From positions 1 through 64,000 of IMG/VR virus record IMGVR_UViG_3300028558_000791: DNA of 64,000 nt; one strand, 5' to 3'. Every line of letters begins with the position of its first letter. Positions within the stretch are counted from its first letter, which is position 1. Below, in pieces: positions 35,394-55,710 of the stretch. Both the position numbers and the translations under genes were made by a program. The notes beneath the pieces are model-generated. The model did not search any database, was not told the origin of the DNA, and saw only the letters and a list, made by a program, of their open reading frames with translations.

Positions 35394-35421
35394 GAACCGG
35401 GTAATTTTGTCATATGATATT

Positions 35422-35583
35422 ATGTTCGATGACAAACTATACAAGTTTCTTTTTAAATGCGATGACTGTGCAATGATTGTCTCTATCGAGTTAGAGGAAG
35501 AAGACGAGCTAGAGAAGGTCAATGAGAATAAGTTCGTTCTCGAATGTCCTTGCGGTGGCCAGAGTCACGTACTGCGAGACTAA
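35422..35583 (+). CDS. 53-aa zinc-ribbon protein (not in ORF track)
   Basis: Hand translation: CDDC...CPCG. Confidence 0.55.
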   Translation: MFDDKLYKFLFKCDDCAMIVSIELEEEDELEKVNENKFVLECPCGGQSHVLRD

Positions 35584-35683
35584 TTTCATATACATACCTA
35601 TCAATACTGATATATAAAACGTATCGAAAGAGGGTTTCGATTTTCGGGCTACGTCCGTTTATTTTAGAAAATTATCTACGTCC

Positions 35684-35712
35684 TTGACGGCGAATGTGCA
35701 GAGTTTTACTAT
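35684..35712 (+). promoter_or_regulatory. sigma70-like promoter of Ro60 gene
   Basis: TTGACG-N17-TACTAT. Confidence 0.6.
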
Positions 35713-35787
35713 GCGCAACTCGACGACATCGGCATGTTTCGTTTCAATTTGTTGGGACTATTTCCCAAATATGGAAGGTGTATTATT

Positions 35788-37419
35788 ATGTCAAACAAGA
35801 ACTTATTCTCAAACAAGAACAAGCTAACGGTATCTGTTTCTAAGAAGGTAACTCTGCCAACCAACACGGTTAATGAGGCAGGTGGAACTGCATATAAGCT
35901 GTCCGACAAGGCTGCTTTGGCGCAGTACGCCATGACTGGTACGTTCAACGGTACATACTATGCATCCGATGCAGATCAACTTAAGAAGGTCCTTGAGTTG
36001 GCAAACAAGGTAGATCCAAAGTTCGTCGCTAAGCTGGCAGTGTACGCACGCCAGAGAGGCTTGATGAAGGATATGCCTGCCGTTCTTGCAGCCGTCATTG
36101 CTGGAAGAGACGCTGACCTATTGGCTACGATTTTCGATAGAGTAATCGACAATCCAAAGATGCTTCGTAACTTCGTTCAGATCATCCGATCTGGCGCAAC
36201 TGGCCGTAAGTCCTTGGGAACTCGCCCAAAGAAGTTGGTACAGAAGTATCTTGAGAACTTGACCGACGAGCAGTTGTTCAAGGCTGATGTTGGTAACGAT
36301 CCGTCGTTGCAGGACATCATCAAGTTGGTTCACCCAAAGCCAACTAACAAGCAGCGTTCTGCGTTGTACGGTTACTTGCTCGACAAGGAGTACAACAAGA
36401 GAGACCTCGTGTCTTTGGCACAACAGTTCGAAGCATTCAAGAAGGATATGAAGGGAGAGATCCCAGATGTTCCGTTCCAGATGTTGACGGCTCTGCCATT
36501 GACTGATACGCACTGGAAGCAGATTGCTGAGAATGCAACCTGGAACCAGATCCGTATGAACCTCAATACGTTTGCTCGTCACAACGTATTGGCTGACAAG
36601 AAGCTGGTCGATGTTTTGGCAGCAAAGCTATCGGACCCAGAGCAGGTCAAGCGTTCCAAGACGTTCCCATATCAGTTGTTCACCACTTACTTGAACGTGG
36701 ACGCCACGATTCCAAGCAAGCTGACGAACGCATTGCAAGATGCGGCTGATTCTTCTTTGGATAACATTCCTGAGTTCCCAGGAAAGGTCTTCGTAATGGT
36801 TGACACTTCTGGTTCTATGGGCTCTGCCGTCACCGGTAAGAGAGTAAATCCAAAGACTGGTAAGGAGGAATCCTTTACGACTAAGGCTCGATGCGTAGAC
36901 GTGGCAGCACTTTTCGCAGCAGCAATCTTGCGCAAGAATCCAGACACTGAGATTGTGCCATTCGACACCTCAGTACATGTTGGTCACCGATTCAATCCAC
37001 GTGATTCGATCATGACCAATGCAAAGACTCTAGCTTCATTCGGTGGTGGTGGTACCAACTGCTCCGCTGCTTTGGAGTATGTCAACAAAAAGGCTGGCAA
37101 GGGCGACCTTGTCATCTACGTGTCTGACAATGAGTCATGGGTTGATACGAAGGCATCTAACTCAGGTGTGTTCGGATACTACCGCCGTAATGGCACTGCC
37201 ACTATGGAAGAGTGGAATAAGTTCGCAGCCCGTAACAAGGGTGCAAAGCTTGTCTGTATCGACATTCAACCAAACTCCTCCACCCAAGCACACGACAGGG
37301 ATGACATCCTGAACGTGGGAGGATTCAGTGACCAGGTGTTCGATGTAATCGCAAGATTCGCCGAGCTTGGAAACAACAAGGATCTCTGGATCAAGACGAT
37401 CGAAGACGTCAAACTCTAA
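35788..37419 (+). CDS. rsr: Ro60 / TROVE domain RNA-binding protein (Rsr) with vWA domain
   Basis: NEAGGTAY, TGTFNGTYY, LVHPKP, RMNLNTFARH, MIDAS VDTSGSM, GGGTNCS, VSDNESW. Confidence 0.93.
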   Translation: MSNKNLFSNKNKLTVSVSKKVTLPTNTVNEAGGTAYKLSDKAALAQYAMTGTFNGTYYASDADQLKKVLELANKVDPKFVAKLAVYARQRGLMKDMPAVLAAVIAGRDADLLATIFDRVIDNPKMLRNFVQIIRSGATGRKSLGTRPKKLVQKYLENLTDEQLFKADVGNDPSLQDIIKLVHPKPTNKQRSALYGYLLDKEYNKRDLVSLAQQFEAFKKDMKGEIPDVPFQMLTALPLTDTHWKQIAENATWNQIRMNLNTFARHNVLADKKLVDVLAAKLSDPEQVKRSKTFPYQLFTTYLNVDATIPSKLTNALQDAADSSLDNIPEFPGKVFVMVDTSGSMGSAVTGKRVNPKTGKEESFTTKARCVDVAALFAAAILRKNPDTEIVPFDTSVHVGHRFNPRDSIMTNAKTLASFGGGGTNCSAALEYVNKKAGKGDLVIYVSDNESWVDTKASNSGVFGYYRRNGTATMEEWNKFAARNKGAKLVCIDIQPNSSTQAHDRDDILNVGGFSDQVFDVIARFAELGNNKDLWIKTIEDVKL

Positions 37420-37427
37420 TCGTCAGA

Positions 37428-37492
37428 GCCTCTAACCGAAGGGTGCCCGAGTGAAGACCGGGTTGCTGATGCAAGTTCAGCATGGAGGCCCA
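37428..37492 (+). ncRNA. Compact tRNA-like RNA directly after Ro60
   Basis: GCCTCTA/TGGAGGC plus CCA; GCTGA-TGCAAGT-TCAGC T-like arm; CCCG/CGGG arm. Confidence 0.55.
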
Positions 37493-37494
37493 TC

Positions 37495-37911
37495 ATGAAT
37501 AAGTTAGAAGATTTAGTGGCGGCAGCAAGACTAGCCGCCCAACATTCGTACAGTCCATACAGCAACTTCAAAGTTGCATCCGCCGTAGAAATGGAAGATG
37601 GAAGCATCTTTAGCGGCTCTAATGTAGAGAATGCGTCTTACGGTCTCACTATCTGTGCAGAGCGCAACGCAATCTTTCAAGCTGTGTCTAAGGGACATCG
37701 CCTAATAAAACGTATCATTGTCTACGCTCCTTCACCAACTGTTCGTACTGGCCCTTGTGGAGCCTGTAGGCAGGTAATTAAAGAATTTGCCGATGAATAT
37801 ACACTAATCATTGGCGCCTGTAACTCAGACGATATATTAACTTTTACAATGGAAGATTTGTTACCAAAGAGTTTTGGTCCCGATAATCTTCTAAAGAAAA
37901 GAAACCAATGA
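37495..37911 (+). CDS. cdd: Cytidine deaminase
   Basis: YSPYS, NVENASYGLTICAER, PCGACRQ. Confidence 0.93.
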   Translation: MNKLEDLVAAARLAAQHSYSPYSNFKVASAVEMEDGSIFSGSNVENASYGLTICAERNAIFQAVSKGHRLIKRIIVYAPSPTVRTGPCGACRQVIKEFADEYTLIIGACNSDDILTFTMEDLLPKSFGPDNLLKKRNQ

Positions 37912-38753
37912 TTAAGCGAAATGGCGTAGAGGTAATGAACGCCCGCACTAAAAACGTCTCTATTGCCAAAGAAACAATCGCTATAATCAACAACCAAAAA
38001 TACACCAATCTCAATGGAGATACAGTAGATATCTCAGTAGAAATGGATGCGGCCATAGACGGCACTCATTACTATGAGGCTGACGTTTTAGTCGGCATGC
38101 CCGCCGATCAGGCTCCCATTCACGCTACGATTGAGGTAGTAAATGAGACTACTGCTCAAGCTGCTGTTCGATTGCAAGCTAAAGGAAAAACTAATCTAGT
38201 TGCCCTTAACTTCGCTTCAGCGCGTAATCAAGGTGGAGGCTTTCTTTCTGGAGCTTTGGCTCAAGAAGAAGACTTGTGTAGGGCTTCTGGCCTATATGGT
38301 TGCCTGAAACGCAAACCATTGTTCTACAATGCAAACATCCTGTGTGACGATGCATTCTATACAAATGGAGTTCTCTACTCACCTAACGTTCCGTTCTTTA
38401 GGGATGATCATAATCTGTTTTTAGAGAAGCCTTTTCCGCTTTCTATCGTCTCAGCACCAGCTCCTAACCTTTCTAGCACCAAGTCGAACATCGACCCTAA
38501 AGTATTAACCTCTCTTATTAGAGAGCGTACTGTTAGGATTCTACAGGTGGCTCATGCCAATGGGCATAAGAACATCATTTTAGGTGCCTGGGGCTGTGGA
38601 GCCTTCGGAAATGATCCTGAAATGGTATCAAAAGCATTTATGTTGGCCCTAACTAAAGTTCCATATTTCGAGCATGTAACCTTTGCGGTATATGATACCA
38701 GAGAGCCGTACGTTTTATATGAAACGTTCAAAGAAGTCTGTAACGCTGTATAG
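37908..38753 (+). CDS. TIGR02452/DUF2263 bacterial-type poly(ADP-ribose) glycohydrolase
   Basis: LNFASA..GGGF..GALAQEEDLCRAS, LGAWGCGAFGN. Confidence 0.9.
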   Translation: MIKRNGVEVMNARTKNVSIAKETIAIINNQKYTNLNGDTVDISVEMDAAIDGTHYYEADVLVGMPADQAPIHATIEVVNETTAQAAVRLQAKGKTNLVALNFASARNQGGGFLSGALAQEEDLCRASGLYGCLKRKPLFYNANILCDDAFYTNGVLYSPNVPFFRDDHNLFLEKPFPLSIVSAPAPNLSSTKSNIDPKVLTSLIRERTVRILQVAHANGHKNIILGAWGCGAFGNDPEMVSKAFMLALTKVPYFEHVTFAVYDTREPYVLYETFKEVCNAV

Positions 38754-39315
38754 ACCAACCGGCCCAAAAGAGTTAGATTTGATTAAAAAGTCTAACTATA
38801 AGAAGTTCCCGCCCCGCTTGCCTGAACAACCAATTTTCTATCCAGTTCTTACAAAAGAGTATGCGGTAAAGATTGCACGAGATTGGAATGTAAAAGCTTC
38901 CGGAATAGGTTTTGTACTAGAATTCAAGGTCCGAAAGGATTTTCTAGACAAATATCCAGTGCAAGTAGCTGGCGGCAATTCTCATCAGGAGTATTGGATT
39001 CCAGCGGAAGAATTAGAAGACTTCAATCAAGCTCTAGTGGGCGAGATAAAGGTCACTGAGACGTACCAAGAGTGGTACATTTACATCCTAAAGTGTTCTG
39101 ATGGTACTTTGTACACAGGTATCACGAACAATCTGGGTAAACGAATCAAACAACATAACGAGGGTAAAGGCGCAAAGTACACGAAGGGTCGTGGTCCCGT
39201 TGCCCTTGTTAAGTTTTTCACCCGATTAACTAAGGGTGAAGCCCTGAAACTTGAATATCAGATCAAACAACTCTCTAAAGAAGAGAAACTGAATTACAAT
39301 GAGCAGAAGAGGTAA
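38719..39315 (+). CDS. Conserved LYRP..RLPEQPIFYPV domain fused to GIY-YIG nuclease
   Basis: C-terminal YIYILKCSDGTLYTGITNN..R..HN..GAKYT. Confidence 0.75.
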   Translation: MKRSKKSVTLYRPTGPKELDLIKKSNYKKFPPRLPEQPIFYPVLTKEYAVKIARDWNVKASGIGFVLEFKVRKDFLDKYPVQVAGGNSHQEYWIPAEELEDFNQALVGEIKVTETYQEWYIYILKCSDGTLYTGITNNLGKRIKQHNEGKGAKYTKGRGPVALVKFFTRLTKGEALKLEYQIKQLSKEEKLNYNEQKR

Positions 39316-39871
39316 AAAAAGTTTTAGTCCTCAATTTGAAAGAGACTACACTTTTTATCTGTCTAATAAAGATAACTTCACATTTGCTGGTTCAGATCTA
39401 AAATTACAATATCGTATTCAGTTTCCAGGAGAACCGGAACCAATTGGTAAGGATGAAGGGGGAAAGGACATTAATGTTCCATTCTCTATTCCTTACTCAG
39501 CAACTGGTAAAACTGCCAAGGTATGTTTCTATTCGCTAGATAGCGAAGGTAAATGTAAACCTTGTGCAGAACCGCAACTTCTAGTAGAAATTCTCACTTG
39601 TAAGGCCGCAATCAATCTACAGATTAAGATTTGGTCACAGAGTCGAGCCGAGTATACTTTATCCAAGATTGAGTTACAAGAATATCTTGATCACTATCAA
39701 GCTCCTGAATGGGTTTTCAAAGCGATTGAGAATCAAAAACTTAAGATTTTGAAGGAATGGAGCGCCGAAAAGCTTTATAAATCCGACTATTACAAGCGGG
39801 CTTATGAGCTTCATATGGGCGAATTTTTAGAAGAGATGCGTGGTTCCGGTGTTATATTAGATCCGAAATGA
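39299..39871 (+). CDS. Hypothetical protein
   Basis: Packed ORF. Confidence 0.55.
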   Translation: MSRRGKKSFSPQFERDYTFYLSNKDNFTFAGSDLKLQYRIQFPGEPEPIGKDEGGKDINVPFSIPYSATGKTAKVCFYSLDSEGKCKPCAEPQLLVEILTCKAAINLQIKIWSQSRAEYTLSKIELQEYLDHYQAPEWVFKAIENQKLKILKEWSAEKLYKSDYYKRAYELHMGEFLEEMRGSGVILDPK

Positions 39872-39893
39872 TCAAACACTGATTAGGAACATA

Positions 39894-40595
39894 ATGACCA
39901 AGGAAAACTTTACATCTATCAACGTAATCATCGACGCATCTGGCTCGATGTCTCACCTCACCCATGACACCATCGGGAACTTTAATACCTTCTTGCAAGA
40001 GCAAAAGGCATTCCCCGGTGAAGCTGTCTTCACTCTTTGTACTTTCAATACTGATTATCACTTGGTCCATGACTTCGTGAAGATTGCTGGTGTCCCTAGC
40101 TTGGATGCTAAGACCTATGTTCCACAAGGTGGAACCGCTTTGTTAGATGCTATGGGATCAACTATTGATTCTGTTGGTAAGAAGTTGGCCGCATTACCAG
40201 AAGAGGAACGTCCTTCTAAGGTTATTTTCCTCATCATCACTGATGGTCATGAAAACTCCAGTCGTCGTTTTGATGCGGCTCAAGTTAAGTCTATGGTCGA
40301 ACATCAGAAGGATACTTATAGTTGGGAGTTCGTATTCATGGGCGCTAACATTGATGCTATCTCTGCCGGCACCAACCTTGGTATCTCTATGCAGAACACT
40401 CTCAACTACGTTCCAAGTGCCGCTGGTACCGAGAATTTGTACAAGAGTATCAGTTCTAACGTAAGCAGCTATCGTGGCTCCAACTCTTCTAGAGTTGACT
40501 TTTTCAATCAGACTCAACAGGGCGTTGGCTCAGTTACTCCTCCAGTCGTAGTTACAACTACCACTACGGTAACTCCTCCAAAGACCTCAAAGTAA
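39894..40595 (+). CDS. von Willebrand factor A domain protein
   Basis: IIDASGSM, GGTALLDA, ITDGHENSS. Confidence 0.88.
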   Translation: MTKENFTSINVIIDASGSMSHLTHDTIGNFNTFLQEQKAFPGEAVFTLCTFNTDYHLVHDFVKIAGVPSLDAKTYVPQGGTALLDAMGSTIDSVGKKLAALPEEERPSKVIFLIITDGHENSSRRFDAAQVKSMVEHQKDTYSWEFVFMGANIDAISAGTNLGISMQNTLNYVPSAAGTENLYKSISSNVSSYRGSNSSRVDFFNQTQQGVGSVTPPVVVTTTTTVTPPKTSK

Positions 40596-40599
40596 TATC

Positions 40600-40806
40600 A
40601 TGTGTGCCGTTTCAGTTATCTATGACATGTTTGGTGGACAACCAGACGATTGGTATACGCTGGAACGTATTGATCTTTTCAAACGTATGGTGGCTGATGC
40701 TCGACTCTTCGATGAGGAGTCGGGCCAGCCCGATTGCGAAGACCCTGAAAAAACTAAAGTTACTGAACGCATTGAAAAAATCGAAGAAGAACTAGAGCAG
40801 AAGTAA
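40600..40806 (+). CDS. Hypothetical phage protein
   Basis: MCAVSVIYD...QPDCEDPEK. Confidence 0.55.
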   Translation: MCAVSVIYDMFGGQPDDWYTLERIDLFKRMVADARLFDEESGQPDCEDPEKTKVTERIEKIEEELEQK

Positions 40807-40807
40807 A

Positions 40808-41416
40808 ATGACTAAAGCATTATATGTTGGTAGTTTCGACCCTATCACCAACGGTCATATTGATATTATGAAGCGTAGCTTACAGTTCTGTAAGCAACTG
40901 GTGATTGGGATAGGTATCAATCCTAACAAGACTACTATGTTTGATGAGCGGGAGAGGAACTCCATGATTTTTCAAACGATAGTGAAGGAGTTTGACTTCC
41001 TTCATTCAACCAATACTTCGGTTGCTTCTTTTCAGGGACTTACAGTAGAGTATGCTAAAGAAATTGGTGCAACGATTCTAATTCGCGGAATTAGATCCGT
41101 TTCTGATTTCGAATATGAAATTAATTTGGCCAACATCAACAAGGTTCTGGCCCCATCAATTGAAACAATTTTCCTGCCCACCAGTCCTGATCTGGCGGTT
41201 GTCTCCTCTTCAATGGTAAAAGAAATTGCAAAGTTGAACGGAGATATTTCAAGATTCGTACCCAGCTATATTGCCGAGAGGATTCATTCAAAATTCGGTT
41301 TCTTCAAGCATGGCAAGACAGAGATTGGCACTGATACTATCAATAGATTACGAGAAGCTACAGTAGCTATTGAGAAAGAATTGGGAATCAAACCAAAAGA
41401 TGAGGGCGAAAAATAA
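40808..41416 (+). CDS. coaD: Phosphopantetheine adenylyltransferase
   Basis: GSFDPITNGH, IRGIRSVSDFEYE, VSSSMVKEIA. Confidence 0.92.
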   Translation: MTKALYVGSFDPITNGHIDIMKRSLQFCKQLVIGIGINPNKTTMFDERERNSMIFQTIVKEFDFLHSTNTSVASFQGLTVEYAKEIGATILIRGIRSVSDFEYEINLANINKVLAPSIETIFLPTSPDLAVVSSSMVKEIAKLNGDISRFVPSYIAERIHSKFGFFKHGKTEIGTDTINRLREATVAIEKELGIKPKDEGEK

Positions 41417-41430
41417 AAATTAGCGACGGG

Positions 41431-41458
41431 TTGACGAGCTAATTTTTAAGACTACAAT
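41431..41458 (+). promoter_or_regulatory. sigma70-like promoter of the RNA cluster
   Basis: TTGACG-N16-TACAAT. Confidence 0.55.
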
Positions 41459-42245: not shown

Positions 42246-42353
42246 TGACGAATGTCCGAGTAGGATTACATTTTTATGCAAAAAAACCGATGGGGTTCGA
42301 TTCCCCTTTAGGGCTGGCGCCAGGCAAAACATCTTATTCATTTCTTGTCGTCA
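42246..42353 (+). ncRNA. Y RNA-like 1 (T-arm cargo)
   Basis: TGACGA-ATG..GAGTAGGAT-TACA / ATCTTATTC..TTG-TCGTCA; internal GGGG-TTCGATT-CCCC. Confidence 0.8.
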
Positions 42354-42355
42354 AT

Positions 42356-42432
42356 CAGAGAATGTTGTTTAATGGTTAGCATCCGTGCCCTGGAAGCATG
42401 TGGTCCCGGTTCGAATCCGGGTTCTCTGACCA
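42356..42432 (+). tRNA. tRNA-Pro(TGG), atypical loop
   Basis: CAGAGAA/TTCTCTG plus ACCA; CGTGC-CCTGGAA-GCATG. Confidence 0.75.
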
Positions 42433-42503
42433 ATGCCAGTATATCTGGAAACTAATGAAGAACATTATTGGTAGTTCTGTTCTCGATGAAGTTTCTTGCT
42501 GGT

Positions 42504-42619
42504 CATACCGAATGAGCTTTAAGAGCTACTCAGTCTTAATAAATAAGTGCATGGGATAGCTACCTTAAAAATAACCGTTATAGTTAAGGCTCATAAGGAA
42601 ACACAATTTTGTCGGTATG
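42504..42619 (+). ncRNA. Y RNA-like 2 (divergent)
   Basis: CATACCGA-ATG / TTTTG-TCGGTATG; second helix GAGCTTTAA/TTAAGGCTC; lacks GGATTACA. Confidence 0.6.
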
Positions 42620-42623
42620 TTTT

Positions 42624-42724
42624 TGGGATACATTAAGTTGGTAATCATTACGATTCTGGTTCGAGTGGTAGGAACACAAATCGGAAACGTAAGTGAGAAG
42701 GTTCGAATCCTTCTGTCCTGACCA
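42624..42724 (+). ncRNA. tRNA-like RNA with long replaced anticodon arm
   Basis: TGGGATA/TGTCCTG plus ACCA; GAAGG-TTCGAAT-CCTTC; arm TTAC-GATT..AATC..GTAA. Confidence 0.7.
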
Positions 42725-42727
42725 AAT

Positions 42728-42801
42728 GACTTTGTGGACAAATTATTAAGTCACTCCCGTTAGAGGGAGAGATGTAAGTGCAAGGCTTGCCAAGGTCACC
42801 A
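42728..42801 (+). ncRNA. tRNA-like RNA with 6-nt anticodon loop (GTTAGA)
   Basis: GACTTTG/CAAGGTC plus ACCA; CTCCC/GGGAG; T-loop TGCAAGG. Confidence 0.7.
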
Positions 42802-42802
42802 T

Positions 42803-43019
42803 GTAACAAATGCCCCGAGAGGATTACATTCATTAGGAGAACGAGGTCGTGGGTCCGAGTCCCACCACTGCTACCATCCCAAAGCACGTCATTAAATTGA
42901 AGGGACACTCGAAAGAGTGATGTTGCCTGACTTACTTAGCGAAAGCTATCTAAGTCCTCATAGCAGTGTAGCTCAGTTGGCAGAGCGCGAAAAACATCTT
43001 TTCAAATTTTTGTTGTTAC
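42803..43019 (+). ncRNA. Y RNA-like 3 containing a circularly permuted tRNA with internal CCA
   Basis: GTAACAA-ATG..GAGAGGAT-TACA / ATCTTTTC..TTG-TTGTTAC; T arm plus CACTGCT-A-CCA precedes AGCAGTG plus D arm. Confidence 0.85.
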
Positions 43020-43022
43020 TAT

Positions 43023-43056
43023 CTCCGCTGTAGGGTCAAACCTAAAGCGGGGACCA
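43023..43056 (+). ncRNA. Minihelix: 12-position hairpin plus A-CCA
   Basis: CTCCGCTGTAGG-GTCAAA-CCTAAAGCGGGG-A-CCA. Confidence 0.6.
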
Positions 43057-43348
43057 AAAGACCAATCGTATCGGTCTTTATGAGAGAGATACATTCCTCT
43101 CAAAAGCATCTAGTGGTCGTCCGTTATCACTGGAGCTAAATAGTTAGCGGGCAGTATTCAGGGTTTGCTCCAGCCGAATTATGAATACTATTATTGAGAT
43201 TAAATTTGTTGGGGGCGTATTCGGTTGCGCTTGATATTCCGAAACTCTAATGGGAGTGAATATAGTTCCATTGTAACACTCAGCTATAACGATTAAGTAA
43301 CTCAGAGTGTTGCGCTTTACTAGCAATAACAATGCATAGTATATGTAT

Positions 43349-43422
43349 TCCGAGGTCGTTCAACGGTAGGACGGGTCGCTGTTAACGACTCTATATTGGT
43401 TCGATTCCAGTCCTCGGAGCCA
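43349..43422 (+). tRNA. tRNA-Asn(GTT)
   Basis: Canonical; G73-CCA. Confidence 0.95.
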
Positions 43423-43428
43423 GAATAT

Positions 43429-43515
43429 TCTGTGGTAGCCTAATGGTAAGGCAGGTGGCTGTTAACCACCCGGTGGTAAAACACTTTCTAGGTTCGAGTC
43501 CTAGCTGCAGAGCCA
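43429..43515 (+). tRNA. tRNA-Asn(GTT) with long variable arm
   Basis: GGTGG-CTGTTAA-CCACC; V-arm GGTG-GTAAAA-CACT. Confidence 0.85.
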
Positions 43516-43624
43516 AATAATACGGGGATTGATTAGACCGAAATGATCCGTATTAGCTGTTATGTTTGGTCAATTCTGCATAACGACAGAAGCTATGTCC
43601 AGTAAAATGGAGTCGTCTTCTGAA

Positions 43625-43880
43625 GATGAATGCCGATAAGGATTACACTAATACAACCGAGCCTCACGCCGTAGAATGCCCGCAAGGATTTCATTCCACA
43701 AATACCGGGTGGCTCACATCTCCCACTACATTACAAGAGATGATGAAAATTAAACTGAGATGTCTGACAAGCCTGCCTACCAGTTAGAGTAACAGGCTCA
43801 GTGGTGTAACTGATAATACACTGTGATTACTTGTTTACTTGTAAACAAAATAATTGCTATCTTTATCAACTTTAGTCATC
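43625..43880 (+). ncRNA. Y RNA-like 4 (large unknown cargo)
   Basis: GATGA-ATG..GATAAGGAT-TACA / ATCTTTATC..TAG-TCATC. Confidence 0.7.
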
Positions 43881-43887
43881 AAAATAT

Positions 43888-43962
43888 TCTGCTCTAGTGT
43901 AATTAGCACGGCGATCTCTTTGTAGGTCGAGGGTCATGGTTTAAGTCCATGGGGCGGAGCCA
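43888..43962 (+). ncRNA. tRNA-like RNA (Gln-like T1-A72, G73) with irregular anticodon arm
   Basis: TCTGCTC/GGGCGGA plus GCCA; CGATCT-CTTTGT-AGGTCG. Confidence 0.65.
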
Positions 43963-43982
43963 AAGCAAATCATGAGAAAGCA

Positions 43983-44411
43983 ATGTTTACTTCAACCGGA
44001 ATCCTTCAATATGATCCTGGTCAGGGTCTAAAACATTTCGATCCATGGTGGGCTCTTCTAGCCTGTGACGATGAAGTATCTAGGTATTATGCCTGGTTAC
44101 TAAAGAGACACGGAGTAGAAGTCTACCCTAACGATAAAGGGTTGTGGGGAACACACGTTTCAGTTTTGAAAGGTGCCGTCCCTCCCAATCAAGATAAGTG
44201 GGGCAAGTATCAAGACTTCGAAGTAGAAATCCATCTCAATCATCTTGTCCGTTATGATAACGGGAAACATGCTTGGGTAGATGTATACTCAGAAGATTTA
44301 TCAGCAATCCGACAGGAGTTAGGCTTCGATGCCAAGCCCTGGTACCATCTGACAATTGGTAGGTTGGTGAGACCATTTGATGTGGACTTTACCAAATATG
44401 GCATAACCTGA
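43983..44411 (+). CDS. 2H phosphoesterase family protein
   Basis: Two HxS/T motifs (THVSV, YHLTI) about 65 aa apart. Confidence 0.7.
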   Translation: MFTSTGILQYDPGQGLKHFDPWWALLACDDEVSRYYAWLLKRHGVEVYPNDKGLWGTHVSVLKGAVPPNQDKWGKYQDFEVEIHLNHLVRYDNGKHAWVDVYSEDLSAIRQELGFDAKPWYHLTIGRLVRPFDVDFTKYGIT

Positions 44412-44427
44412 TATATAATCAGCACAT

Positions 44428-44502
44428 ACCCTCGTACGCATCGGGTGAGGCGGGAAGCTTGTCAAGCTTTTGAGGGCGGTTCGAGTCCGCTCGGGGGTGC
44501 CA
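44428..44502 (+). tRNA. tRNA-Asp(GTC)
   Basis: GAAGC-TTGTCAA-GCTTT; G73-CCA. Confidence 0.85.
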
Positions 44503-44569
44503 AAGTCAAATGCCTTGATAGGATTACATTTTACCAAAAGAAAACATCTTATCTACTTTTTGTTGACTT
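44503..44569 (+). ncRNA. Y RNA-like 5 (minimal, stem only)
   Basis: AAGTCAA-ATG..GATAGGAT-TACA / AAAC-ATCTTATC..TTG-TTGACTT. Confidence 0.8.
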
Positions 44570-44572
44570 TTT

Positions 44573-44666
44573 CGATCACGCGTAGCTGGTTGCTCGGGCG
44601 AGACTTATAATCTTGCAAGGACTGATATTCCGTAACGGCAGGGTTCGATTCCCTGGTGATCGACCA
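44573..44666 (+). tRNA. Atypical tRNA-Ile(TAT), 6-bp anticodon stem, long variable region
   Basis: CGATCAC/GTGATCG plus ACCA; GCGAGA-CTTATAA-TCTTGC. Confidence 0.75.
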
Positions 44667-44669
44667 TAT

Positions 44670-44746
44670 GGCACTGTAGCCCAAAGGCAGGAGGCACCTG
44701 ACTTAAAATCAGTTCAGTGTGGGTTCAAATCCCACCAGTGCTACCA
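44670..44746 (+). tRNA. tRNA-Leu(TAA) with short variable loop
   Basis: CTGA-CTTAAAA-TCAG; no type II arm. Confidence 0.85.
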
Positions 44747-44765
44747 ATAAAGATATAGTTAATAT

Positions 44766-44841
44766 GGAACTTGAGCAAGTATGGTTATTGCATCGGTCTG
44801 AAAAGCCGACAAACGGGGTTCGATCCCCCGAGGTTCCACCA
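44766..44841 (+). tRNA. tRNA-Phe(GAA)
   Basis: TCGGT-CTGAAAA-GCCGA; ACCA. Confidence 0.9.
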
Positions 44842-44842
44842 A

Positions 44843-45193
44843 ATGAGAATTGTTCAAAAGCCTTGGGGCCATGAAGAAATCTGGGCAGAAACTCCCAACT
44901 ATGTTGGAAAAGTTCTCTCAATCAATCCTGGTCACAGACTCTCAAGACAATATCATAATCTCAAAGAAGAAACATTCAGAGTTCTTTTTGGGACGTTGAC
45001 GCTAGAAATAGGTGAGGGTGACGATATAGTTACTCACGTATTAACGGCAGGTCAAACTTTTCACTGTCCTCCAAAGACAGTTCATAGAATGATTTGCCAA
45101 CGAGTTATCAACTATGCACCAGTAAATGTATTGGAAGTATCAACCAATCATTTAGATGATGTAGTAAGATTAGAAGACGATTATAAAAGATAA
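44843..45193 (+). CDS. Cupin domain protein (mannose-6-phosphate isomerase C-terminal-like)
   Basis: KPWG, LSRQYH..KEE, HR, DDVVRLEDDY. Confidence 0.85.
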   Translation: MRIVQKPWGHEEIWAETPNYVGKVLSINPGHRLSRQYHNLKEETFRVLFGTLTLEIGEGDDIVTHVLTAGQTFHCPPKTVHRMICQRVINYAPVNVLEVSTNHLDDVVRLEDDYKR

Positions 45194-45270
45194 CGTGCTA
45201 TAGCTCAGTTGGTTAGAGTGCCTCTCTGATAAGGAGGAAGTCCCAGGTTCGAATCCCGGTAGCACGACCA
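45194..45270 (+). tRNA. tRNA-Ile(GAT)
   Basis: Canonical cloverleaf. Confidence 0.92.
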
Positions 45271-45481
45271 GTAACGAATGCAGTTAGGATTACATCCATA
45301 ACGACCTTAAAGTAGTTGACAGAGCCGCGAGGCGCTGAATCGATGGCAACAAAACGATCACCAGGTAATGCTGAGGTCCATCAGACTCTTGAGTCGAAGT
45401 TGCGGGGCGAACGGGAAGTATCTCGAAAGAGACTTTCAATGTGCCGGTCACACCCAGTATCTTAGCAATTTTTGTCGTTAT
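45271..45481 (+). ncRNA. Y RNA-like 6 (large unknown cargo)
   Basis: GTAACGA-ATG..GTTAGGAT-TACA / ATCTTAGC..TTG-TCGTTAT. Confidence 0.78.
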
Positions 45482-45485
45482 ACAT

Positions 45486-45561
45486 GGGACGGTAGCTCAG
45501 TGGTTAGAGCGCAACGCTGATAACGTTGAAGTCGATGGTTCGATTCCATCTCGTCCTACCA
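45486..45561 (+). tRNA. tRNA-Ile(GAT)
   Basis: Canonical cloverleaf. Confidence 0.95.
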
Positions 45562-45697
45562 ATGGCAAGCCATTAAAGCCCTTCCTTCTATAATTAATTG
45601 ATAAAACAGGACTTTTGCTTTCTTGCCAGATGATATTACATTTATGGCCCCACGCTTTAGTGGGTCACCATAAATAATAAATGAAGGTCGCACCTTC

Positions 45698-45786
45698 AGC
45701 CTGCCCACATGGATGGAAACTGTGGCGTCACCTTGGTAAACCAAGTAGTAAAGTGACAAGCCTGCCCACATGGTTGGAAACTGTGG
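45698..45786 (+). repeat. 28-nt direct repeat x2 with 33-nt hairpin spacer
   Basis: AGCCTGCCCACATGGWTGGAAACTGTGG at 45698 and 45759. Confidence 0.85.
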
Positions 45787-45789
45787 AAA

Positions 45790-45866
45790 GAATCGTTTAG
45801 CTCAATGGTAGAGCGTGGTCACTAGTGACGACTAAGATGCGGGTTCGATTCCCGTAATGATTCCCA
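45790..45866 (+). ncRNA. His-like tRNA (G-1:C73) with 9-nt anticodon loop
   Basis: GAATCGTT/AATGATTC-CCA; TGGTC-ACTAGTGAC-GACTA. Confidence 0.75.
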
Positions 45867-45894
45867 AGGGGACAACATTGTTGCTCCCTCAATC

Positions 45895-46048
45895 GAGGCA
45901 AATGCACCGAAGGTTTACATTTGGAATAATCATATCGTCGTAAGACGGTCGCAGGTTCGAATCCTGCAACTTCCGAAAGGAAGTTTGGCTGAGTGGTCTA
46001 AAGCAATGATGCTGAAAAGCATGCTAACTTTCAAATTTTTGTTGCTTC
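45895..46048 (+). ncRNA. yrlA: Y RNA-like 7, classical YrlA architecture
   Basis: GAGGCAA-ATG / TTG-TTGCTTC; T arm GCAGG-TTCGAAT-CCTGC, acceptor AACTTCC-GAAA-GGAAGTT, then D arm. Confidence 0.85.
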
Positions 46049-46050
46049 AT

Positions 46051-46179
46051 CTCCCGCTAGTTTAAAACGAAACACTTGTTATAGAGGACGTATACTTAAT
46101 CTATGATGAGCAAGTAGTAGAGCAAAACACCTCCACGCTAAGGAGGAGATTGCGAGTGCAAGTCTCGCAAGGGAGACCA
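46051..46179 (+). ncRNA. tRNA-like RNA with ~50-nt hairpin inserted in the D loop
   Basis: CTCCC/GGGAG plus ACCA; CCTCC-ACGCTAA-GGAGG; GCGAG-TGCAAGT-CTCGC. Confidence 0.7.
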
Positions 46180-46184
46180 AGGGT

Positions 46185-46511
46185 ATGAACCAAGACAAGC
46201 CGACAATGAAGGACCTGAAAGAAGGTCCGCCATTACTTTGTCCTATCTGTGATAGACCAAACTACTTCCCTTCAGACCATCACATGGTTCCGAAGTCAAG
46301 AGGCGGCAAGTCTACTGAAACGATCTGTGAAGATTGCCACAAAGCAATCCATGCACACTTCACCAATAAAGAATTGGAAGAAACGTATCATACGCCAGAA
46401 GCTTTGTTAGCTCATGAAGGTTTTGCCAAACAGATTAAATTTCTATCGAAACAAGATCCCGGCGGCAGATCGAAAACTAAAAAGAATAAAGATCGTCTAA
46501 GACGAGAATAA
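46185..46511 (+). CDS. HNH endonuclease
   Basis: CPIC, DHHMVPKSRGG, CEDCHKAIH. Confidence 0.85.
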   Translation: MNQDKPTMKDLKEGPPLLCPICDRPNYFPSDHHMVPKSRGGKSTETICEDCHKAIHAHFTNKELEETYHTPEALLAHEGFAKQIKFLSKQDPGGRSKTKKNKDRLRRE

Positions 46512-46516
46512 ATTGT

Positions 46517-46595
46517 GGTGCTATCGTATTTGTGGCCTTCAAGACTGCCCGCTGAAAACGGGACAAAATGAGTTCGATTCTCATTGGCACCACCA
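46517..46595 (+). tRNA. tRNA-Phe(GAA), weak D arm
   Basis: CCCG-CTGAAAA-CGGG; GGTGCTA/TGGCACC plus ACCA. Confidence 0.8.
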
Positions 46596-46664
46596 GCTAA
46601 TCGCGTGATATATCCTGTGTAACCAAGCGTGAGCCCCCGAGGCCACGATCGAAAAGGCGGTAAT

Positions 46665-47276
46665 ATGGGACAAGTAATTCTAGCGAAATGCGTTGTAACA
46701 ACAGAAGAAGATTGGGTTCCAGTTGTATTAGAGGATGACCTCGAAACCTTAGCTGTACAGCAAGGTATTCTACAAGAGAATCAATCTAAAGCGCGAAGAC
46801 TAAACGATAGAGCAATCAATAAAGATCCCGAAGCTAGTCTTAGGAACACGATCTTTTCTAAGCGCTCTGAGTATGCAGTACATCAGTACTTCGATAAAGT
46901 TCCCCGAGTTACTTTACCCGGAGAGTTTCATGACTGGCCAGATGTTGGTCAGGCGAATGTTAGATTCATCGGTGATGCAGCCGATGGCTTAATGATACAA
47001 GATAGAGACCAGGGCGAACTGCCCATGATACTAACTACAACCAAGGACTTGACATTTCAAGACCGAACGATATGGTTAATCGGTTGGGGTCTCACAGATC
47101 AATTACGACGTAATTTTTATCTAATCAACCAGTTCCGAGAGAATAAGAATTGGGGTAGAATGGGCGGAGACTTTGAGGACCATGAGCAATTCATTTATCC
47201 TCGCTCGATGCTGACTCCGATGAAATGGTTTAGCAAAGAAACCATGAACGTACCATATATCAATAAAAAGAAATAA
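46665..47276 (+). CDS. Hypothetical protein, related to 50396-50908 (possible PD-(D/E)xK-like fold)
   Basis: E-x-A..., DVG..VR..L....D pattern shared. Confidence 0.5.
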   Translation: MGQVILAKCVVTTEEDWVPVVLEDDLETLAVQQGILQENQSKARRLNDRAINKDPEASLRNTIFSKRSEYAVHQYFDKVPRVTLPGEFHDWPDVGQANVRFIGDAADGLMIQDRDQGELPMILTTTKDLTFQDRTIWLIGWGLTDQLRRNFYLINQFRENKNWGRMGGDFEDHEQFIYPRSMLTPMKWFSKETMNVPYINKKK

Positions 47277-50072: not shown

Positions 50073-50149
50073 GGGTCTTTTGATGTAAAGGCTGGCCTCT
50101 AGACTTTAGTGCTAGAGGACATCGGGTTCGACTCCCGAATGATCCGCCA
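50073..50149 (+). ncRNA. tRNA-like RNA, no D stem, loop CT-TTA-GT
   Basis: GGGTC/GATCC plus GCCA; CCTCTAG/CTAGAGG; TCGGG-TTCGACT-CCCGA. Confidence 0.65.
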
Positions 50150-54903: not shown

Positions 54904-55710
54904 ATGAAGAAATTTTTTCTTGTATTATCGCTTCTTGCAGTAGGTATCTTCGCCGGCTGTGGTTCTCAATTAGTTGAGTTCCCAGAAGACGGGGCGGCCA
55001 CCGCAGATAGCGGCGTTCCAGTAGACGACGGCTCTACTGATAACGATGTAAATGTAACACCACCTGATAGTGGTGTATGCGTGGATCAAAATTGTCCTTT
55101 GGGACAAGCATGTCAAAATGGCGTTTGTACTCCTGTCGATCCTTGCTCCGGCGTTACCTGCCCTGATGGTGACGTTTGCAAAGATGGAACCTGTACTCCA
55201 GTTGACCCATGCGTTGGTGTAACTTGCCCTGATGGCAGCGTATGTAAAGACGGCATTTGCACTCCAGTTGATCCTTGTGCTGGCGTAACTTGCCCTAAAG
55301 GTGTTCAGTGTGTGAATGGCACTTGCCCAACTCCACCTGATGCTGGCTTGCCTGATTCCGGTCCACCAAAGGATCCATGTGATGGTGTCTGCTGTCCCAA
55401 GAATGATGTCTGCAAAGACGGAGCTTGTGTACCAGTTGATCCTTGTGCAGGCGTGAAGTGCTGTGTTGGTAAGGTCTGTAAGGAAGGTGCTTGTGTCCCA
55501 GTTGACCCATGTGCTGGAGTACAGTGCCCAGAAAGCAGGGTCTGTAAGAATGGCTCATGTGTATGTGATGGTGATAATGATGATGACAACCACGGTTGCA
55601 AGAGCGGTCAAGACCGTGTCTGTAGCTGGAGTCATGGACAGAAACATCACCACTGTGTTGATCATGACAAGACCTCTTGTCATCAGAAGCATGGTGATAA
55701 AAAAGAGTAA
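54904..55710 (+). CDS. Cys-rich repeat lipoprotein
   Basis: FAGC lipobox; about 6 PVDPCxGVxCPxxxVCKDGxC repeats. Confidence 0.8.
   Translation: MKKFFLVLSLLAVGIFAGCGSQLVEFPEDGAATADSGVPVDDGSTDNDVNVTPPDSGVCVDQNCPLGQACQNGVCTPVDPCSGVTCPDGDVCKDGTCTPVDPCVGVTCPDGSVCKDGICTPVDPCAGVTCPKGVQCVNGTCPTPPDAGLPDSGPPKDPCDGVCCPKNDVCKDGACVPVDPCAGVKCCVGKVCKEGACVPVDPCAGVQCPESRVCKNGSCVCDGDNDDDNHGCKSGQDRVCSWSHGQKHHHCVDHDKTSCHQKHGDKKE

What the first reader, a model, noticed from the sequence alone, without database searches (positions are those of the whole stretch)
43625..43880. Y RNA-like element with a ~210-nt non-tRNA cargo
Seen: the conserved stems enclose several hairpins (GAGCC/GGCTC, CATCTC/GAGATG, AGCCTG/CAGGCT, CAGTG/CACTG, TTGTTTAC/GTAAACAA) and no T-loop. 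GACAAGCCTGCC is shared with the repeat at 45755. Inference: an unrecognised effector domain.
Basis: partly seen in the sequence, partly recalled or inferred. Interest (0 to 1): 0.7.

Follow-up and report, generated by a model that had tools for sequence, protein, structure and literature searches.

The report
Phage Y RNA with pseudoknot cargo
A 481-kb phage encodes, beside its own Ro60 protein and inside a tRNA gene array, a 256-nt RNA whose ends form a Y RNA-type (Ro60-binding type) stem and whose interior is a conserved chain of pseudoknots unlike any catalogued RNA, which would make it a new kind of module on a known RNA scaffold.

Summary
43625-43880 (+) is closed by two helices (GAUGA/UCAUC; GAUAAGGAU/AUCUUUAUC) around an AUGCC / AACUUUAG internal loop. 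Five other elements between 42.2 and 46.0 kb share this architecture, and it resembles the Rfam YrlB/YrlA consensus (weak scores, far below gathering). A Ro60/Rsr gene (TROVE + Ro60-vWA) lies 6.2 kb upstream on the same strand.

The 215-nt interior has no tRNA features and no Rfam match. The 53-codon ORF is not conserved (7-53 codons in 24 homologues). The interior is not random hairpins. Twenty-four distinct homologues from soil and sediment phage contigs share a ~106-nt core, with compensatory changes in:
- hairpin Hb, whose loop pairs downstream (K);
- an extended hairpin Hc, whose loop pairs upstream (S1);
- a probable third pseudoknot (S1'/Hd).

Cells paired are 92-96%, against 20-50% when partners are slid.

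CAGTG/CACTG is better drawn as a pseudoknot. The 12-mer shared with 45755 is chance.

Best reading: a Y RNA-type scaffold carrying a new structured module. Rsr binding, expression and the module's partner are untested.

The parts
43625..43629 (+). P1, 5' strand (GAUGA). With the next three bases it reads GAUGAAUG, the counterpart of the YrlA motif GNCGAAN0-1G with U in place of C.
   Evidence: Pairs with 43876-43880. In paralogues and relatives the strand varies as CGA/CAA/UGA with UCG/UUG/UCA opposite. In 17 short relatives the five core P1 pairs are 100% paired with many two-sided changes.
43630..43634 (+). 5' side of the internal loop, AUGCC (conserved AAUGC motif).
   Evidence: Present in all six elements of the window and in the Rfam YrlA and YrlB consensus lines.
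43635..43643 (+). P2, 5' strand GAUAAGGAU, followed by the conserved UACA.
   Evidence: Nine pairs with 43859-43867. The extra A relative to element E3 (GAUAGGAU) is matched by an extra U opposite. E4 orthologues covary at the ends of the helix.
43644..43716 (+). Variable 5' domain of the cargo: GAGCC 43659-63 / GGCTC 43711-15, enclosing GAAUG 43674-78 / CAUUC 43692-96 and a GNRA-capped hairpin CC-GCAA-GG at 43680-87.
   Evidence: Close relatives have only a short GNRA hairpin here (CCC-GGAA-GGG), while others have unrelated insertions. It is lineage-specific and was not testable by covariation.
43717..43742 (+). Hairpin Hb: CAUCUC 43717-22 / GAGAUG 43737-42 with a 14-nt loop.
   Evidence: 96.4% paired, with 4 of 6 pairs changed on both sides. 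RNAalifold predicts it de novo. 90.4% paired on the model-based alignment.
43728..43731 (+). K, 5' strand (ACAU), inside the Hb loop.
   Evidence: Pairs with 43760-63 (AUGU). Variants are GCAU/GUGC, GUAC/GUAC, ACAC/GUGU, GCAC/GUGC and GUAUC/GAUAU. 96.2% paired on A6. 90.3% on A9, an alignment not fitted to this helix. Swap test p<=0.0002.
43760..43766 (+). K 3' strand (AUGU, 43760-63) directly followed by S1 5' strand (CUG, 43764-66).
43771..43797 (+). Extended hairpin Hc: GCCUG 43771-75 / CAGGC 43793-97 plus inner UAC 43778-80 / GUA 43789-91. Its 8-nt loop starts with CAG 43781-83 (S1 3' strand).
   Evidence: Hc is 100% paired in 22 distinct sequences. The refined Hc + S1 model is 91.7% paired against 28-44% slid, with 10 of 12 pairs changed on both sides. 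S1 is 98.1% paired on A9. A further relative carries A43779G together with T43790C.
43798..43822 (+). Probable third pseudoknot: S1' UCAG 43798-801 / CUGA 43810-13, interleaved with Hd GGUGU 43803-07 / ACACU 43818-22.
   Evidence: Parsed by hand. Variants are GUAG/CUAC, UCCA/UGGA, CCCG/UGGG and ACAG/CUGU, with only 2 bp in five lineages. Swap test p<=0.0004. T43822C turns G-U into G-C in a relative. A rule-based anchor mis-registered several sequences, giving 56.7% paired against 61.7% at slide +1, so that count did not support the helix. It was not countable on a tool alignment.
43831..43848 (+). Hairpin He (UUGUUUAC / GUAAACAA), at the position of a variable hairpin.
   Evidence: Relatives have a hairpin of different sequence and length here. 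It could not be aligned, so it was not tested.
43859..43880 (+). 3' arm: P2 3' strand AUCUUUAUC (43859-67), loop AACUUUAG (43868-75), P1 3' strand UCAUC (43876-80).
   Evidence: Same layout as the YrlB consensus AUCC..AUuuAUUUGuCg.
35734..37419 (+). Ro60/Rsr orthologue (561 aa), the presumed protein partner.
   Evidence: Pfam vWA_Ro60 9e-14 and TROVE 3e-9. Orthologues of 74-86% identity lie about 8 kb upstream of the E4 orthologue in all three relatives' contigs that are held.
43888..43963 (+). tRNA-like gene 7 nt downstream, ending in CCA. The scanners do not call it. Its 5' end would define the 3' end of the element after RNase P cleavage (inferred).
   Evidence: Folds as a cloverleaf with T loop UUUAAGU. 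Conserved in relatives.
42247..46047 (+). The array of six Y-type elements: E1 42247-42352, E2 42805-43017, E4 43625-43880 (this finding), E3 44505-44567, E6 45273-45479, E5 about 45895-46047.
   Evidence: Weak YrlB hit on E3 (22.3 bits) and weak YrlA hit on E5 (24.2 bits).

Best explanation
The element is a genuine, conserved non-coding RNA gene of a huge phage. It is one of six Y RNA-type RNAs embedded in the phage's tRNA array.

Shown:
- Its 5' and 3' ends pair into the two-helix, internal-loop stem that characterises bacterial YrlA/YrlB RNAs.
- The phage encodes the matching Ro60/Rsr protein on the same strand.
- The interior holds a conserved ~106-nt core (43717-43822). The loop of hairpin Hb pairs with a strand that abuts the next helix. 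The loop of the extended hairpin Hc pairs with that upstream strand. A third pseudoknot probably follows.
- Variable hairpins flank this core on both sides.

Inferred:
- The RNA is made as part of the tRNA-array transcript and released by tRNA-processing enzymes. RNase P would cut at the tRNA-like gene 7 nt downstream, and the phage carries its own RNase P RNA.
- The stem docks on phage Rsr.
- The pseudoknot module, in place of the tRNA-like module of YrlA, gives this particular Rsr particle its specificity. It could do so by binding a partner protein or RNA, or by protecting the RNA.
- Any exoribonuclease partner would have to be the host's, because the phage encodes no S1-domain or PNPase-type protein. 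This parallels the PNPase recruitment reported for D. radiodurans Yrn1 and for Thermus phage phiLo Yrl RNAs.
For: Arms:
- Same architecture and motifs as Rfam YrlB and YrlA.
- Six elements clustered at 42.2-46.0 kb: five found by the structure scan, E5 by its 5' arm. Only about six weak chance hits elsewhere in 2 x 481 kb.
- P1 and P2 covary among paralogues and in unrelated phages.

Protein partner:
- TROVE + Ro60-vWA gene at 35734-37419.
- Rsr orthologues beside the E4 orthologue in 3 of 3 relatives held.
- TROVE in 3 of 5 other phage contigs with such arrays. The two without are fragments, 6-13% complete.

Cargo:
- 24 distinct homologues, 195-282 nt.
- Hb + K 96.3% paired against 20-50% slid.
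- Hc + S1 91.7% paired against 28-44% slid.
- On an alignment fitted only to Hb and Hc, K is 90.3% and S1 98.1% paired.
- RNAalifold finds Hb and Hc unaided.
- A model built from one clade finds the other clade at E 0.006-0.017.
- Further compensatory changes in a ~90% relative.

Not coding: the ORF from the arm's AUG is 7-53 codons across homologues, with no Pfam hit.

Not a repeat or mobile element: single copy in the genome.

Precedents from the literature:
- Y RNAs co-transcribed with a tRNA, RNase P cleavage of a YrlA, and several Y RNAs per genome with different modules (PMC4201824).
- A phage Ro60 binding phage Yrl RNAs and host PNPase (PMC12135203).
Against: - No evidence of transcription. 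No RNA run on record holds it.
- Rsr binding is untested.
- Rfam scores are far below gathering: 22 bits against 97 for YrlB and 24 against 69 for YrlA. These hits are on sister elements, not on this one.
- The published 5' motif GNCGAAN0-1G is met only as GAUGAAUG.
- The element lies 6.2 kb from rsr, outside the 4-kb window used in the published survey.
- P1 is only 5 bp.
- All 24 homologues were collected with a pattern that fixes P1 and most of P2. Their arm conservation is therefore partly by construction.
- The shuffle and swap tests do not correct for relatedness of the sequences.
- The third pseudoknot is reduced to 2 bp in five lineages, rests on a hand parse, and a rule-based count did not separate it from a slid register.
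- An alignment-free test for S1 was not significant (p = 0.25). Only fixed-register tests were.
- Nothing indicates what the module binds.
Confidence: 0.6

Rival explanations
1. The pseudoknot domain is an autonomous functional RNA, such as a ligand-sensing, catalytic or protein-sponging domain. The Y-type arms would serve only as a generic closing and processing cassette of the tRNA array, for stability or excision, without a role for Rsr in this element.
For: The arms enclose very different contents: nothing, tRNA-like domains, or two unrelated large cargos. The core is highly ordered with conserved unpaired stretches. The element lies 6.2 kb from rsr, and tRNA genes flank it on both sides.
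Against: The arms carry sequence motifs, not just pairing, and these are shared with Rsr-bound Salmonella YrlB/YrlA as modelled in Rfam. Arm arrays co-occur with TROVE genes. No known riboswitch or ribozyme family matches in the window or in eight relatives.
Confidence: 0.2
2. A Y RNA gene interrupted by an insertion, such as an intron-like or other selfish element. The cargo would then have no role in the Y RNA itself.
For: The interior is much longer than in any sister element with a tRNA-like domain. An HNH endonuclease gene (46185-46511) and a GIY-YIG gene (38683-39315) lie in the region. The variable domains show lineage-specific insertions.
Against: It is single copy in the 481-kb genome. 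It sits at the same position with the same core in 24 diverged homologues, under purifying selection on pairing. No tRNA-like remnant flanks the cargo. No group I or II intron or other Rfam match was found.
Confidence: 0.07
3. A small protein gene: the 53-codon ORF 43626-43787.
For: The ORF exists and starts at an AUG.
Against: The AUG is part of the conserved arm motif present in every element. In the 24 homologues the frame closes after 7-53 codons. There is no Pfam match. Substitutions preserve base pairing, not a reading frame.
Confidence: 0.02
4. Chance hairpins in a spacer of the tRNA array.
For: The folding energy is no better than shuffled sequence (z = -0.24). The shared 12-mer is at chance level.
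Against: The core is conserved with compensatory changes across 24 homologues, 92-96% paired against 20-50% for slid partners.
Confidence: 0.01

Closest known systems
Salmonella/Mycobacterium YrlB and YrlA (Rfam RF02565, RF02553; Chen et al. 2014, PMC4201824)
   Same: The termini pair into a stem with an internal loop. The motifs AAUGC, GGAUUACA and UUUG-U sit at the same places. The gene is on the same strand as a Ro60 orthologue, and several differently equipped copies occur per genome.
   Different: There is no tRNA-like domain (YrlA) and no small loop (YrlB). Instead there is a 215-nt interior with a pseudoknot core. The motif reads GAUGAAUG rather than GNCGAAN0-1G. The element lies 6.2 kb rather than <=4 kb from rsr. 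There is no Rfam score on this element, and sister elements score far below gathering.
Deinococcus radiodurans Yrn1 in the Rsr / Y RNA / PNPase particle
   Same: It works like this by hypothesis: one end binds Ro60 and the other end is a structured module that recruits another component (described in PMC4201824).
   Different: The Yrn1 module is about 60 nt and contains a T-arm. Here the module is larger, pseudoknotted and unrelated in sequence. No partner is known.
Thermus phage phiLo Ro60 with Yrl1 and Yrl2 (PMC12135203)
   Same: A phage encodes Ro60 together with its own Y-like RNAs, and host PNPase is reported to join the complex. The phage studied here likewise lacks its own PNPase or S1-domain protein.
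   Different: The phiLo RNAs are two short RNAs next to the gene. Here there are six elements within a tRNA array, two of them with large non-tRNA cargos.
Strings of H-type pseudoknots beside tRNA-like domains (tmRNA PK2-PK4; the upstream pseudoknot domain of tobamovirus 3' ends). Recalled from general knowledge, not tested.
   Same: Consecutive short pseudoknots in an RNA associated with tRNA mimicry and tRNA-processing enzymes.
   Different: No sequence or model match: ARAGORN and Rfam find no tmRNA here. The resemblance is architectural only.

Membership tests
Bacterial/phage Y RNA of the YrlA/YrlB type | Long stem formed by pairing of the 5' and 3' termini, interrupted by an internal loop or bulge (the Ro60-binding module). 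| tested here: met
   P1 43625-29/43876-80, loop AUGCC / AACUUUAG, P2 43635-43/43859-67. The pairing covaries in paralogues and relatives.
Bacterial/phage Y RNA of the YrlA/YrlB type | GNCGAAN0-1G motif near the 5' end (Chen et al. 2014). | tested here: inconclusive
   The element reads GAUGAAUG, which is 7 of 8 positions with U for C. The partner strand changes UCG to UCA. Sister element E1 reads GACGAAUG, an exact match. Across phage elements the position varies CGA/CAA/UGA with its partner.
Bacterial/phage Y RNA of the YrlA/YrlB type | Encoded next to a Ro60/Rsr orthologue on the same strand (<=4 kb in the published survey). | tested here: inconclusive
   Same strand. The rsr gene ends at 37419 and the element starts at 43625, which is 6.2 kb. 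The array's first Y element is 4.8 kb away.
Bacterial/phage Y RNA of the YrlA/YrlB type | Bound by, and stabilised by, Ro60/Rsr. | not testable with these tools
   Only co-occurrence could be measured: TROVE genes in 7 of 9 phage records carrying such arms.
Rfam RF02553 YrlA | tRNA-like module (T arm, D arm, closed acceptor stem) and a score at or above gathering (69 bits). | tested here: not met
   No T-loop motif. No tRNA or YrlA hit at E<=10 on 43560-43980.
Rfam RF02565 YrlB | Short hairpin-type Y RNA with a score at or above gathering (97 bits). | tested here: not met
   No hit on this element. The bare sister element E3 scores 22.3 bits.
tRNA / tmRNA | Cloverleaf or tRNA-like domain detectable by ARAGORN or Rfam. 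| tested here: not met
Any other Rfam 15 family (riboswitches, ribozymes, introns, large ornate phage RNAs) | A match to the covariance model. | tested here: not met
   Only noise (E>2) on the element. Nothing on the homologous cargo in eight relatives at E<=1.

The most novel reading that the evidence does not exclude
Huge soil phages would use Ro60 as a common platform and an array of Y-type RNAs as interchangeable adaptors. The pseudoknot-chain module described here would be a previously unknown structured RNA domain that directs the phage Ro60 particle to a specific host target: a host exoribonuclease, the ribosome, or a defence RNA. Alternatively, the module itself would have ligand-binding or catalytic activity.
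Probability: 0.3. Interest if true: 0.85.

Novelty: new variant of a known kind. Interest (0 to 1): 0.66.

Why it matters
In the paper read here (PMC4201824), Y RNAs are described as two-part adaptors: a Ro60-binding stem plus a module that decides what the particle does. The bacterial and phage modules described there are tRNA mimics or small loops.

A Y-type scaffold carrying a conserved, covariation-supported pseudoknot domain of about 106 nt would widen that repertoire. So would the five sister scaffolds with other contents in one phage. Together they offer a natural experiment: the same protein and the same stem with six different modules. That makes the long-standing question of what Y RNA modules recruit directly testable.

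It also adds an apparently uncatalogued structured RNA motif (no match in Rfam 15), with at least 24 members in environmental phages.

Tried and rejected
- **Phage record search:** blastn of 43000-47000 against deposited phages found only tRNA matches.
- **First arm pattern in IMG/VR:** mostly chance hits. The real ones were picked out by requiring a complementary 3' arm.
- **Cargo BLAST:** against the loci and the own genome it gave only chance-level short matches.
- **Whole-element MAFFT alignments:** they misplace the window's longer 5' domain. RNAalifold and a naive all-against-all covariation scan on them found almost nothing.
- **Automatic best-scoring search for two pseudoknots:** it picked spurious alternatives.
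- **Alignment-free 'longest helix' test:** significant for K (p<=0.0005) but not for S1 (p = 0.25), and marginal for S1' (p = 0.04). Helices of 3-4 bp arise by chance in 10 x 12-nt windows. Fixed-register counts and swap tests were used instead.
- **MAFFT on the third pseudoknot block:** not structurally consistent. A rule-based anchor mis-registered several sequences and gave 56.7% paired against 61.7% at slide +1. That helix therefore has no count on a tool alignment.
- **P2 in the 17 short elements:** partly misregistered, 74% paired.
- **Sequencing runs:** no RNA run on record holds the element. The RNA runs cover only the neighbouring tRNA-Asn, from other organisms.
- **Promoter and terminator scans:** nothing beyond chance next to the element.
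- **Own-genome searches:** S1 domain, RNase PH/PNPase and RtcB were all negative.
- **Complex prediction:** not used, because it gives no verdict for RNA.
- **Cellular genomes:** the pseudoknot model was not searched against them.

Full report
**Context.** The window is the first 64 kb of a 480,838-bp IMG/VR virus record. Its genes run almost entirely on the + strand. It holds 29 ARAGORN tRNA genes, mostly at 41.5-52 kb and 62-64 kb, and a bacterial class A RNase P RNA at 56887-57250 (272 bits). Upstream of the tRNA array lies a 561-aa protein (35734-37419) with Pfam Ro60-vWA (9e-14) and TROVE (3e-9) domains, that is, a Ro60/Rsr orthologue. Sequencing runs holding the region are rhizosphere and soil metagenomes.

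**The observation.** The interval 43625-43880 is bounded by two helices:
- P1, GAUGA (43625-29) with UCAUC (43876-80);
- P2, GAUAAGGAU (43635-43) with AUCUUUAUC (43859-67).

The helices are separated by an internal loop, AUGCC on the 5' side and AACUUUAG on the 3' side.

The same layout recurs in five other elements:
- E1, 42247-42352
- E2, 42805-43017
- E3, 44505-44567
- E6, 45273-45479
- E5, about 45895-46047

Each has a 5-nt P1 ending in A, then AUGC(N0-4), an 8-9-bp P2, UACA, the contents, the P2 partner, (N)A(N)UUUUUG and the P1 partner. A scan for this architecture over both strands of the whole 481-kb genome returned five of these elements plus about six weak chance hits with long spacers. 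E5 has a 7-bp P2 and was found through its 5' arm.

The helices covary between paralogues:
- P2: GAGUAGGAU/AUCUUAUUC, GAGAGGAU/AUCUUUUC, GAUAGGAU/AUCUUAUC, GUUAGGAU/AUCUUAGC, and GAUAAGGAU/AUCUUUAUC in the element under study.
- P1: GACGA/UCGUC, AACAA/UUGUU, GUCAA/UUGAC, AACGA/UCGUU, GAUGA/UCAUC.

**Are the arms Y RNA arms?** On an 86-nt search the short element E3 aligns end to end with Rfam YrlB (22.3 bits, E = 0.009). It shares GaAUG-CU, GGAUUACAU, CAUC and AUUUGU at corresponding places. E5, whose contents are a T arm, a closed acceptor-like stem and a D arm, hits YrlA (24.2 bits). The YrlA consensus shows the same cgaAUGC ... AaAcUuGucg frame. These scores are far below gathering (97 and 69 bits), so this is a resemblance, not Rfam membership.

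The motif that Chen et al. (PMC4201824) describe near the 5' end of YrlA and YrlB, GNCGAAN0-1G, is exact in E1 (GACGAAUG). In E4 it reads GAUGAAUG, with the partner strand changed to match.

The same arm family occurs in many other IMG/VR phage contigs, often as tandem arrays with 15-184-nt contents. In 17 short elements from nine contigs the five core P1 pairs are 100% paired with numerous two-sided changes. P2 is 74% paired on a partly misregistered alignment.

TROVE genes accompany the arms:
- the window's own genome;
- all three relatives' contigs that are held, at 74-86% identity and about 8 kb upstream of the E4 orthologue;
- three of five unrelated contigs, the two negatives being fragments 6-13% complete.

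**The interior is not a tRNA, not a known RNA, and not a gene.** There is no T-loop motif. There is no tRNA, tmRNA or other Rfam match better than E = 2.7 on 43560-43980. Nothing matches the homologous interiors of eight relatives at E <= 1. The 53-codon ORF begins at the AUG of the conserved arm motif, and in 24 homologues that frame closes after 7 to 53 codons. It has no Pfam match. The interior is single copy in the genome.

**Relatives.** The downstream 142-aa gene (a weak 2H-phosphoesterase match) led to syntenic contigs with an orthologous element. One metagenome scan with the arm pattern then gave 24 distinct elements of 195-282 nt. One of them, on a 498-kb contig, is identical to the window's copy. 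Because the pattern fixes P1 and most of P2, arm conservation in this set is partly by construction. The interior was unconstrained.

**Structure of the interior.** Anchoring on one hairpin present in all 24 (Hc: 5 bp, loop 16-17 nt, or 44 nt with an inserted hairpin in three sequences) puts the neighbouring segments in register. The core spans 43717-43822 in the window and has four parts.

1. *Hb* is CAUCUC/GAGAUG. Elsewhere it reads CCACUC/GAGUGG, CCAUUC/GAAUGG, AUACUC/GAGUAU, CUGCUC/GAGCAG or CCUC/GAGG.
2. *K* is four to seven bases of the Hb loop (ACAU 43728-31) pairing with AUGU 43760-63. Elsewhere it reads GCAU/GUGC, GUAC/GUAC, ACAC/GUGU, ACAUGA/UCAUGU or GUAUC/GAUAU.
3. *S1 and Hc.* Directly abutting K, CUG (43764-66) pairs with the first bases (CAG 43781-83) of the 8-nt loop of the extended hairpin Hc. 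Hc is GCCUG/CAGGC plus UAC/GUA. At the same register, S1 elsewhere reads CUC/GAG, CUGGU/AUCAG, CUCG/CGAG, UCUU/GAGG, CCUU/AAGG or AUCA/UGAU.
4. *S1' and Hd.* Immediately after Hc, UCAG (43798-801) pairs with CUGA (43810-13) inside the loop of Hd (GGUGU/ACACU).

Formal counts:

| Alignment and helices | Cells paired | Slid partners | Two-sided changes | Call |
|---|---|---|---|---|
| MAFFT, 14 sequences, Hb + K | 96.3% | 20-50% | 7 of 10 pairs; 0 of 500 shuffles as high | 60 |
| 24 sequences (22 distinct), Hc + S1 | 91.7% | 28-44% | 10 of 12 pairs | 81 (first version) |
| Model R1 alignment (fitted to Hb and Hc only), all helices | 93.6% | 24-43% | 17 of 22 pairs | 91 |

On the R1 alignment, which was not fitted to the pseudoknot helices, K is 90.3% paired and S1 98.1%. 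RNAalifold predicts Hb and the extended Hc without guidance. Model R1 was built from one clade only. It finds members of the other clade at the right place at E 0.006-0.017.

A swap test compared complementarity within a sequence with complementarity between lineages. It gave p <= 0.0004 for S1, 0.0002 for K and 0.0004 for S1'. A ~90% relative seen in two runs adds A43779G with T43790C, compensatory in Hc, and T43822C, which turns G-U into G-C in Hd.

Caveats:
- The shuffle and swap controls do not correct for shared ancestry.
- An alignment-free test was not significant for S1.
- S1'/Hd could be parsed only by hand, shrinks to 2 bp in five lineages, and a rule-based count did not separate it from a slid register. 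I call it probable.

- CATCTC/GAGATG is Hb and AGCCTG/CAGGCT is Hc. Both are supported.
- CAGTG/CACTG overlaps S1'/Hd and is better drawn as that pseudoknot.
- TTGTTTAC/GTAAACAA occupies a position where relatives have a hairpin of other sequence. It was not testable.
- GAGCC/GGCTC belongs to a 5' domain (43644-43716) that is replaced in close relatives by a single GNRA hairpin. It too is lineage-specific.
- The 12-mer shared with 45755 is not conserved in relatives (they read GACAAACUUGAU). It is within chance, since 29% of random 256-nt segments share as many 12-mers.

**How it most likely works.**

*Shown:* a conserved structured RNA gene with Y-type arms, in a tRNA array, in phages that encode Ro60.

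*Inferred from the literature read (PMC4201824, PMC12135203):*
- The stem binds Rsr.
- The RNA is cut out of the array transcript. D. radiodurans Yrn2 is co-transcribed with a tRNA, and M. smegmatis YrlA is cut by RNase P.
- The module determines the partner.

A tRNA-like gene that the scanners miss starts 7 nt after P1 (43888-43963), so RNase P would set the 3' end. The only promoter-like site of note lies before the array (41431-41458, 10 of 12 matches), and nothing beyond chance flanks the element.

The phage has no S1-domain, PNPase-type or RtcB gene. An exoribonuclease partner, if any, would therefore be the host's, as reported for phage phiLo. The suggestion that pseudoknots might be bound by S1/KH-type domains is my own conjecture, not a result.

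**Comparison and novelty.** The element works like a YrlA/YrlB-type Y RNA by architecture and context. It fails the tests for membership of the Rfam families, and it lacks the tRNA-like domain that defines YrlA. In the papers read and searched here I found no Y RNA with a pseudoknotted or comparably large module, and no description of six-member Y arrays in phage tRNA islands. That search covers only open-access text. I rate it a new variant of a known kind. The module itself is an apparently uncatalogued RNA motif (no Rfam 15 match) with at least 24 members.

**What remains open.** Transcription, ends, Rsr binding, the fold in solution and the partner are all untested. No RNA run on record holds the element.

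Noticed in passing
window 42805-43017: Y-type element E2. Inside the arms come a T arm, a 3' acceptor strand and an encoded CCA (42851-42877). About 80 nt with two GNRA-capped hairpins follow, and then the matching 5' acceptor strand and D arm (42959-42988). This is a permuted or split tRNA-like domain whose insert could be removed by tRNA end-processing.
   Followed up: partly
window 45273-45479: Sixth Y-type element (E6: AACGA AUGCA GUUAGGAU ... AUCUUAGC AAUUUUUG UCGUU). Its second large non-tRNA cargo (168 nt, hairpins capped GCGA and GAAA) is unrelated to the one studied. An orthologue lies at L122:3393-3591.
   Followed up: partly
window 56887-57250: A full-length bacterial class A RNase P RNA (272 bits, E 8e-88) encoded by the virus record, a few kb from the tRNA and Y RNA array.
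   Followed up: no
window 43888-43963: A tRNA-like gene missed by ARAGORN and Rfam. It folds as a cloverleaf, has an unusual T loop (UUUAAGU) and an encoded CCA, and is conserved in relatives.
   Followed up: partly
window 50073-50149, 42728-42801, 44573-44666: Unusual tRNAs: one with anticodon UUA (reads the UAA stop codon), one that ARAGORN reports with a two-base anticodon, and a 94-nt tRNA-Ile(UAU).
   Followed up: no
window 45689-45717 and 45759-45787: A direct repeat, AGCCUGCCCACAUGG(A/U)UGGAAACUGUGG, each copy containing a CCACA/UGUGG hairpin, between two tRNA genes. It is conserved in relatives (blastn matches to L122, L123, L127).
   Followed up: no
window 34206-41416 and 43983-44411: Genes around rsr: nucleoside deoxyribosyltransferase-like/NUDIX, dCMP deaminase, microbial PARG, GIY-YIG nuclease and a cytidylyltransferase-like protein. 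A weak 2H-phosphoesterase-like gene sits inside the tRNA array. This looks like a nucleotide and RNA-repair neighbourhood.
   Followed up: partly
window 55108-55539: Five 66-nt repeats, two tandem runs 102 nt apart, encoding a cysteine-rich unit of 22 residues.
   Followed up: no
L135:1160-1385, L147, L148: In three homologues the loop of hairpin Hc carries an extra 28-nt insert after the S1 strand. The pseudoknot core tolerates an expansion at that point.
   Followed up: partly
L066 (IMGVR_UViG_3300032164_000003), minus strand, about 1016-1828 in reversed coordinates: Six Y-type elements in tandem within about 800 nt in an unrelated phage contig that also has a TROVE gene. Arrays of Y-type RNAs therefore seem widespread in phages.
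   Followed up: partly
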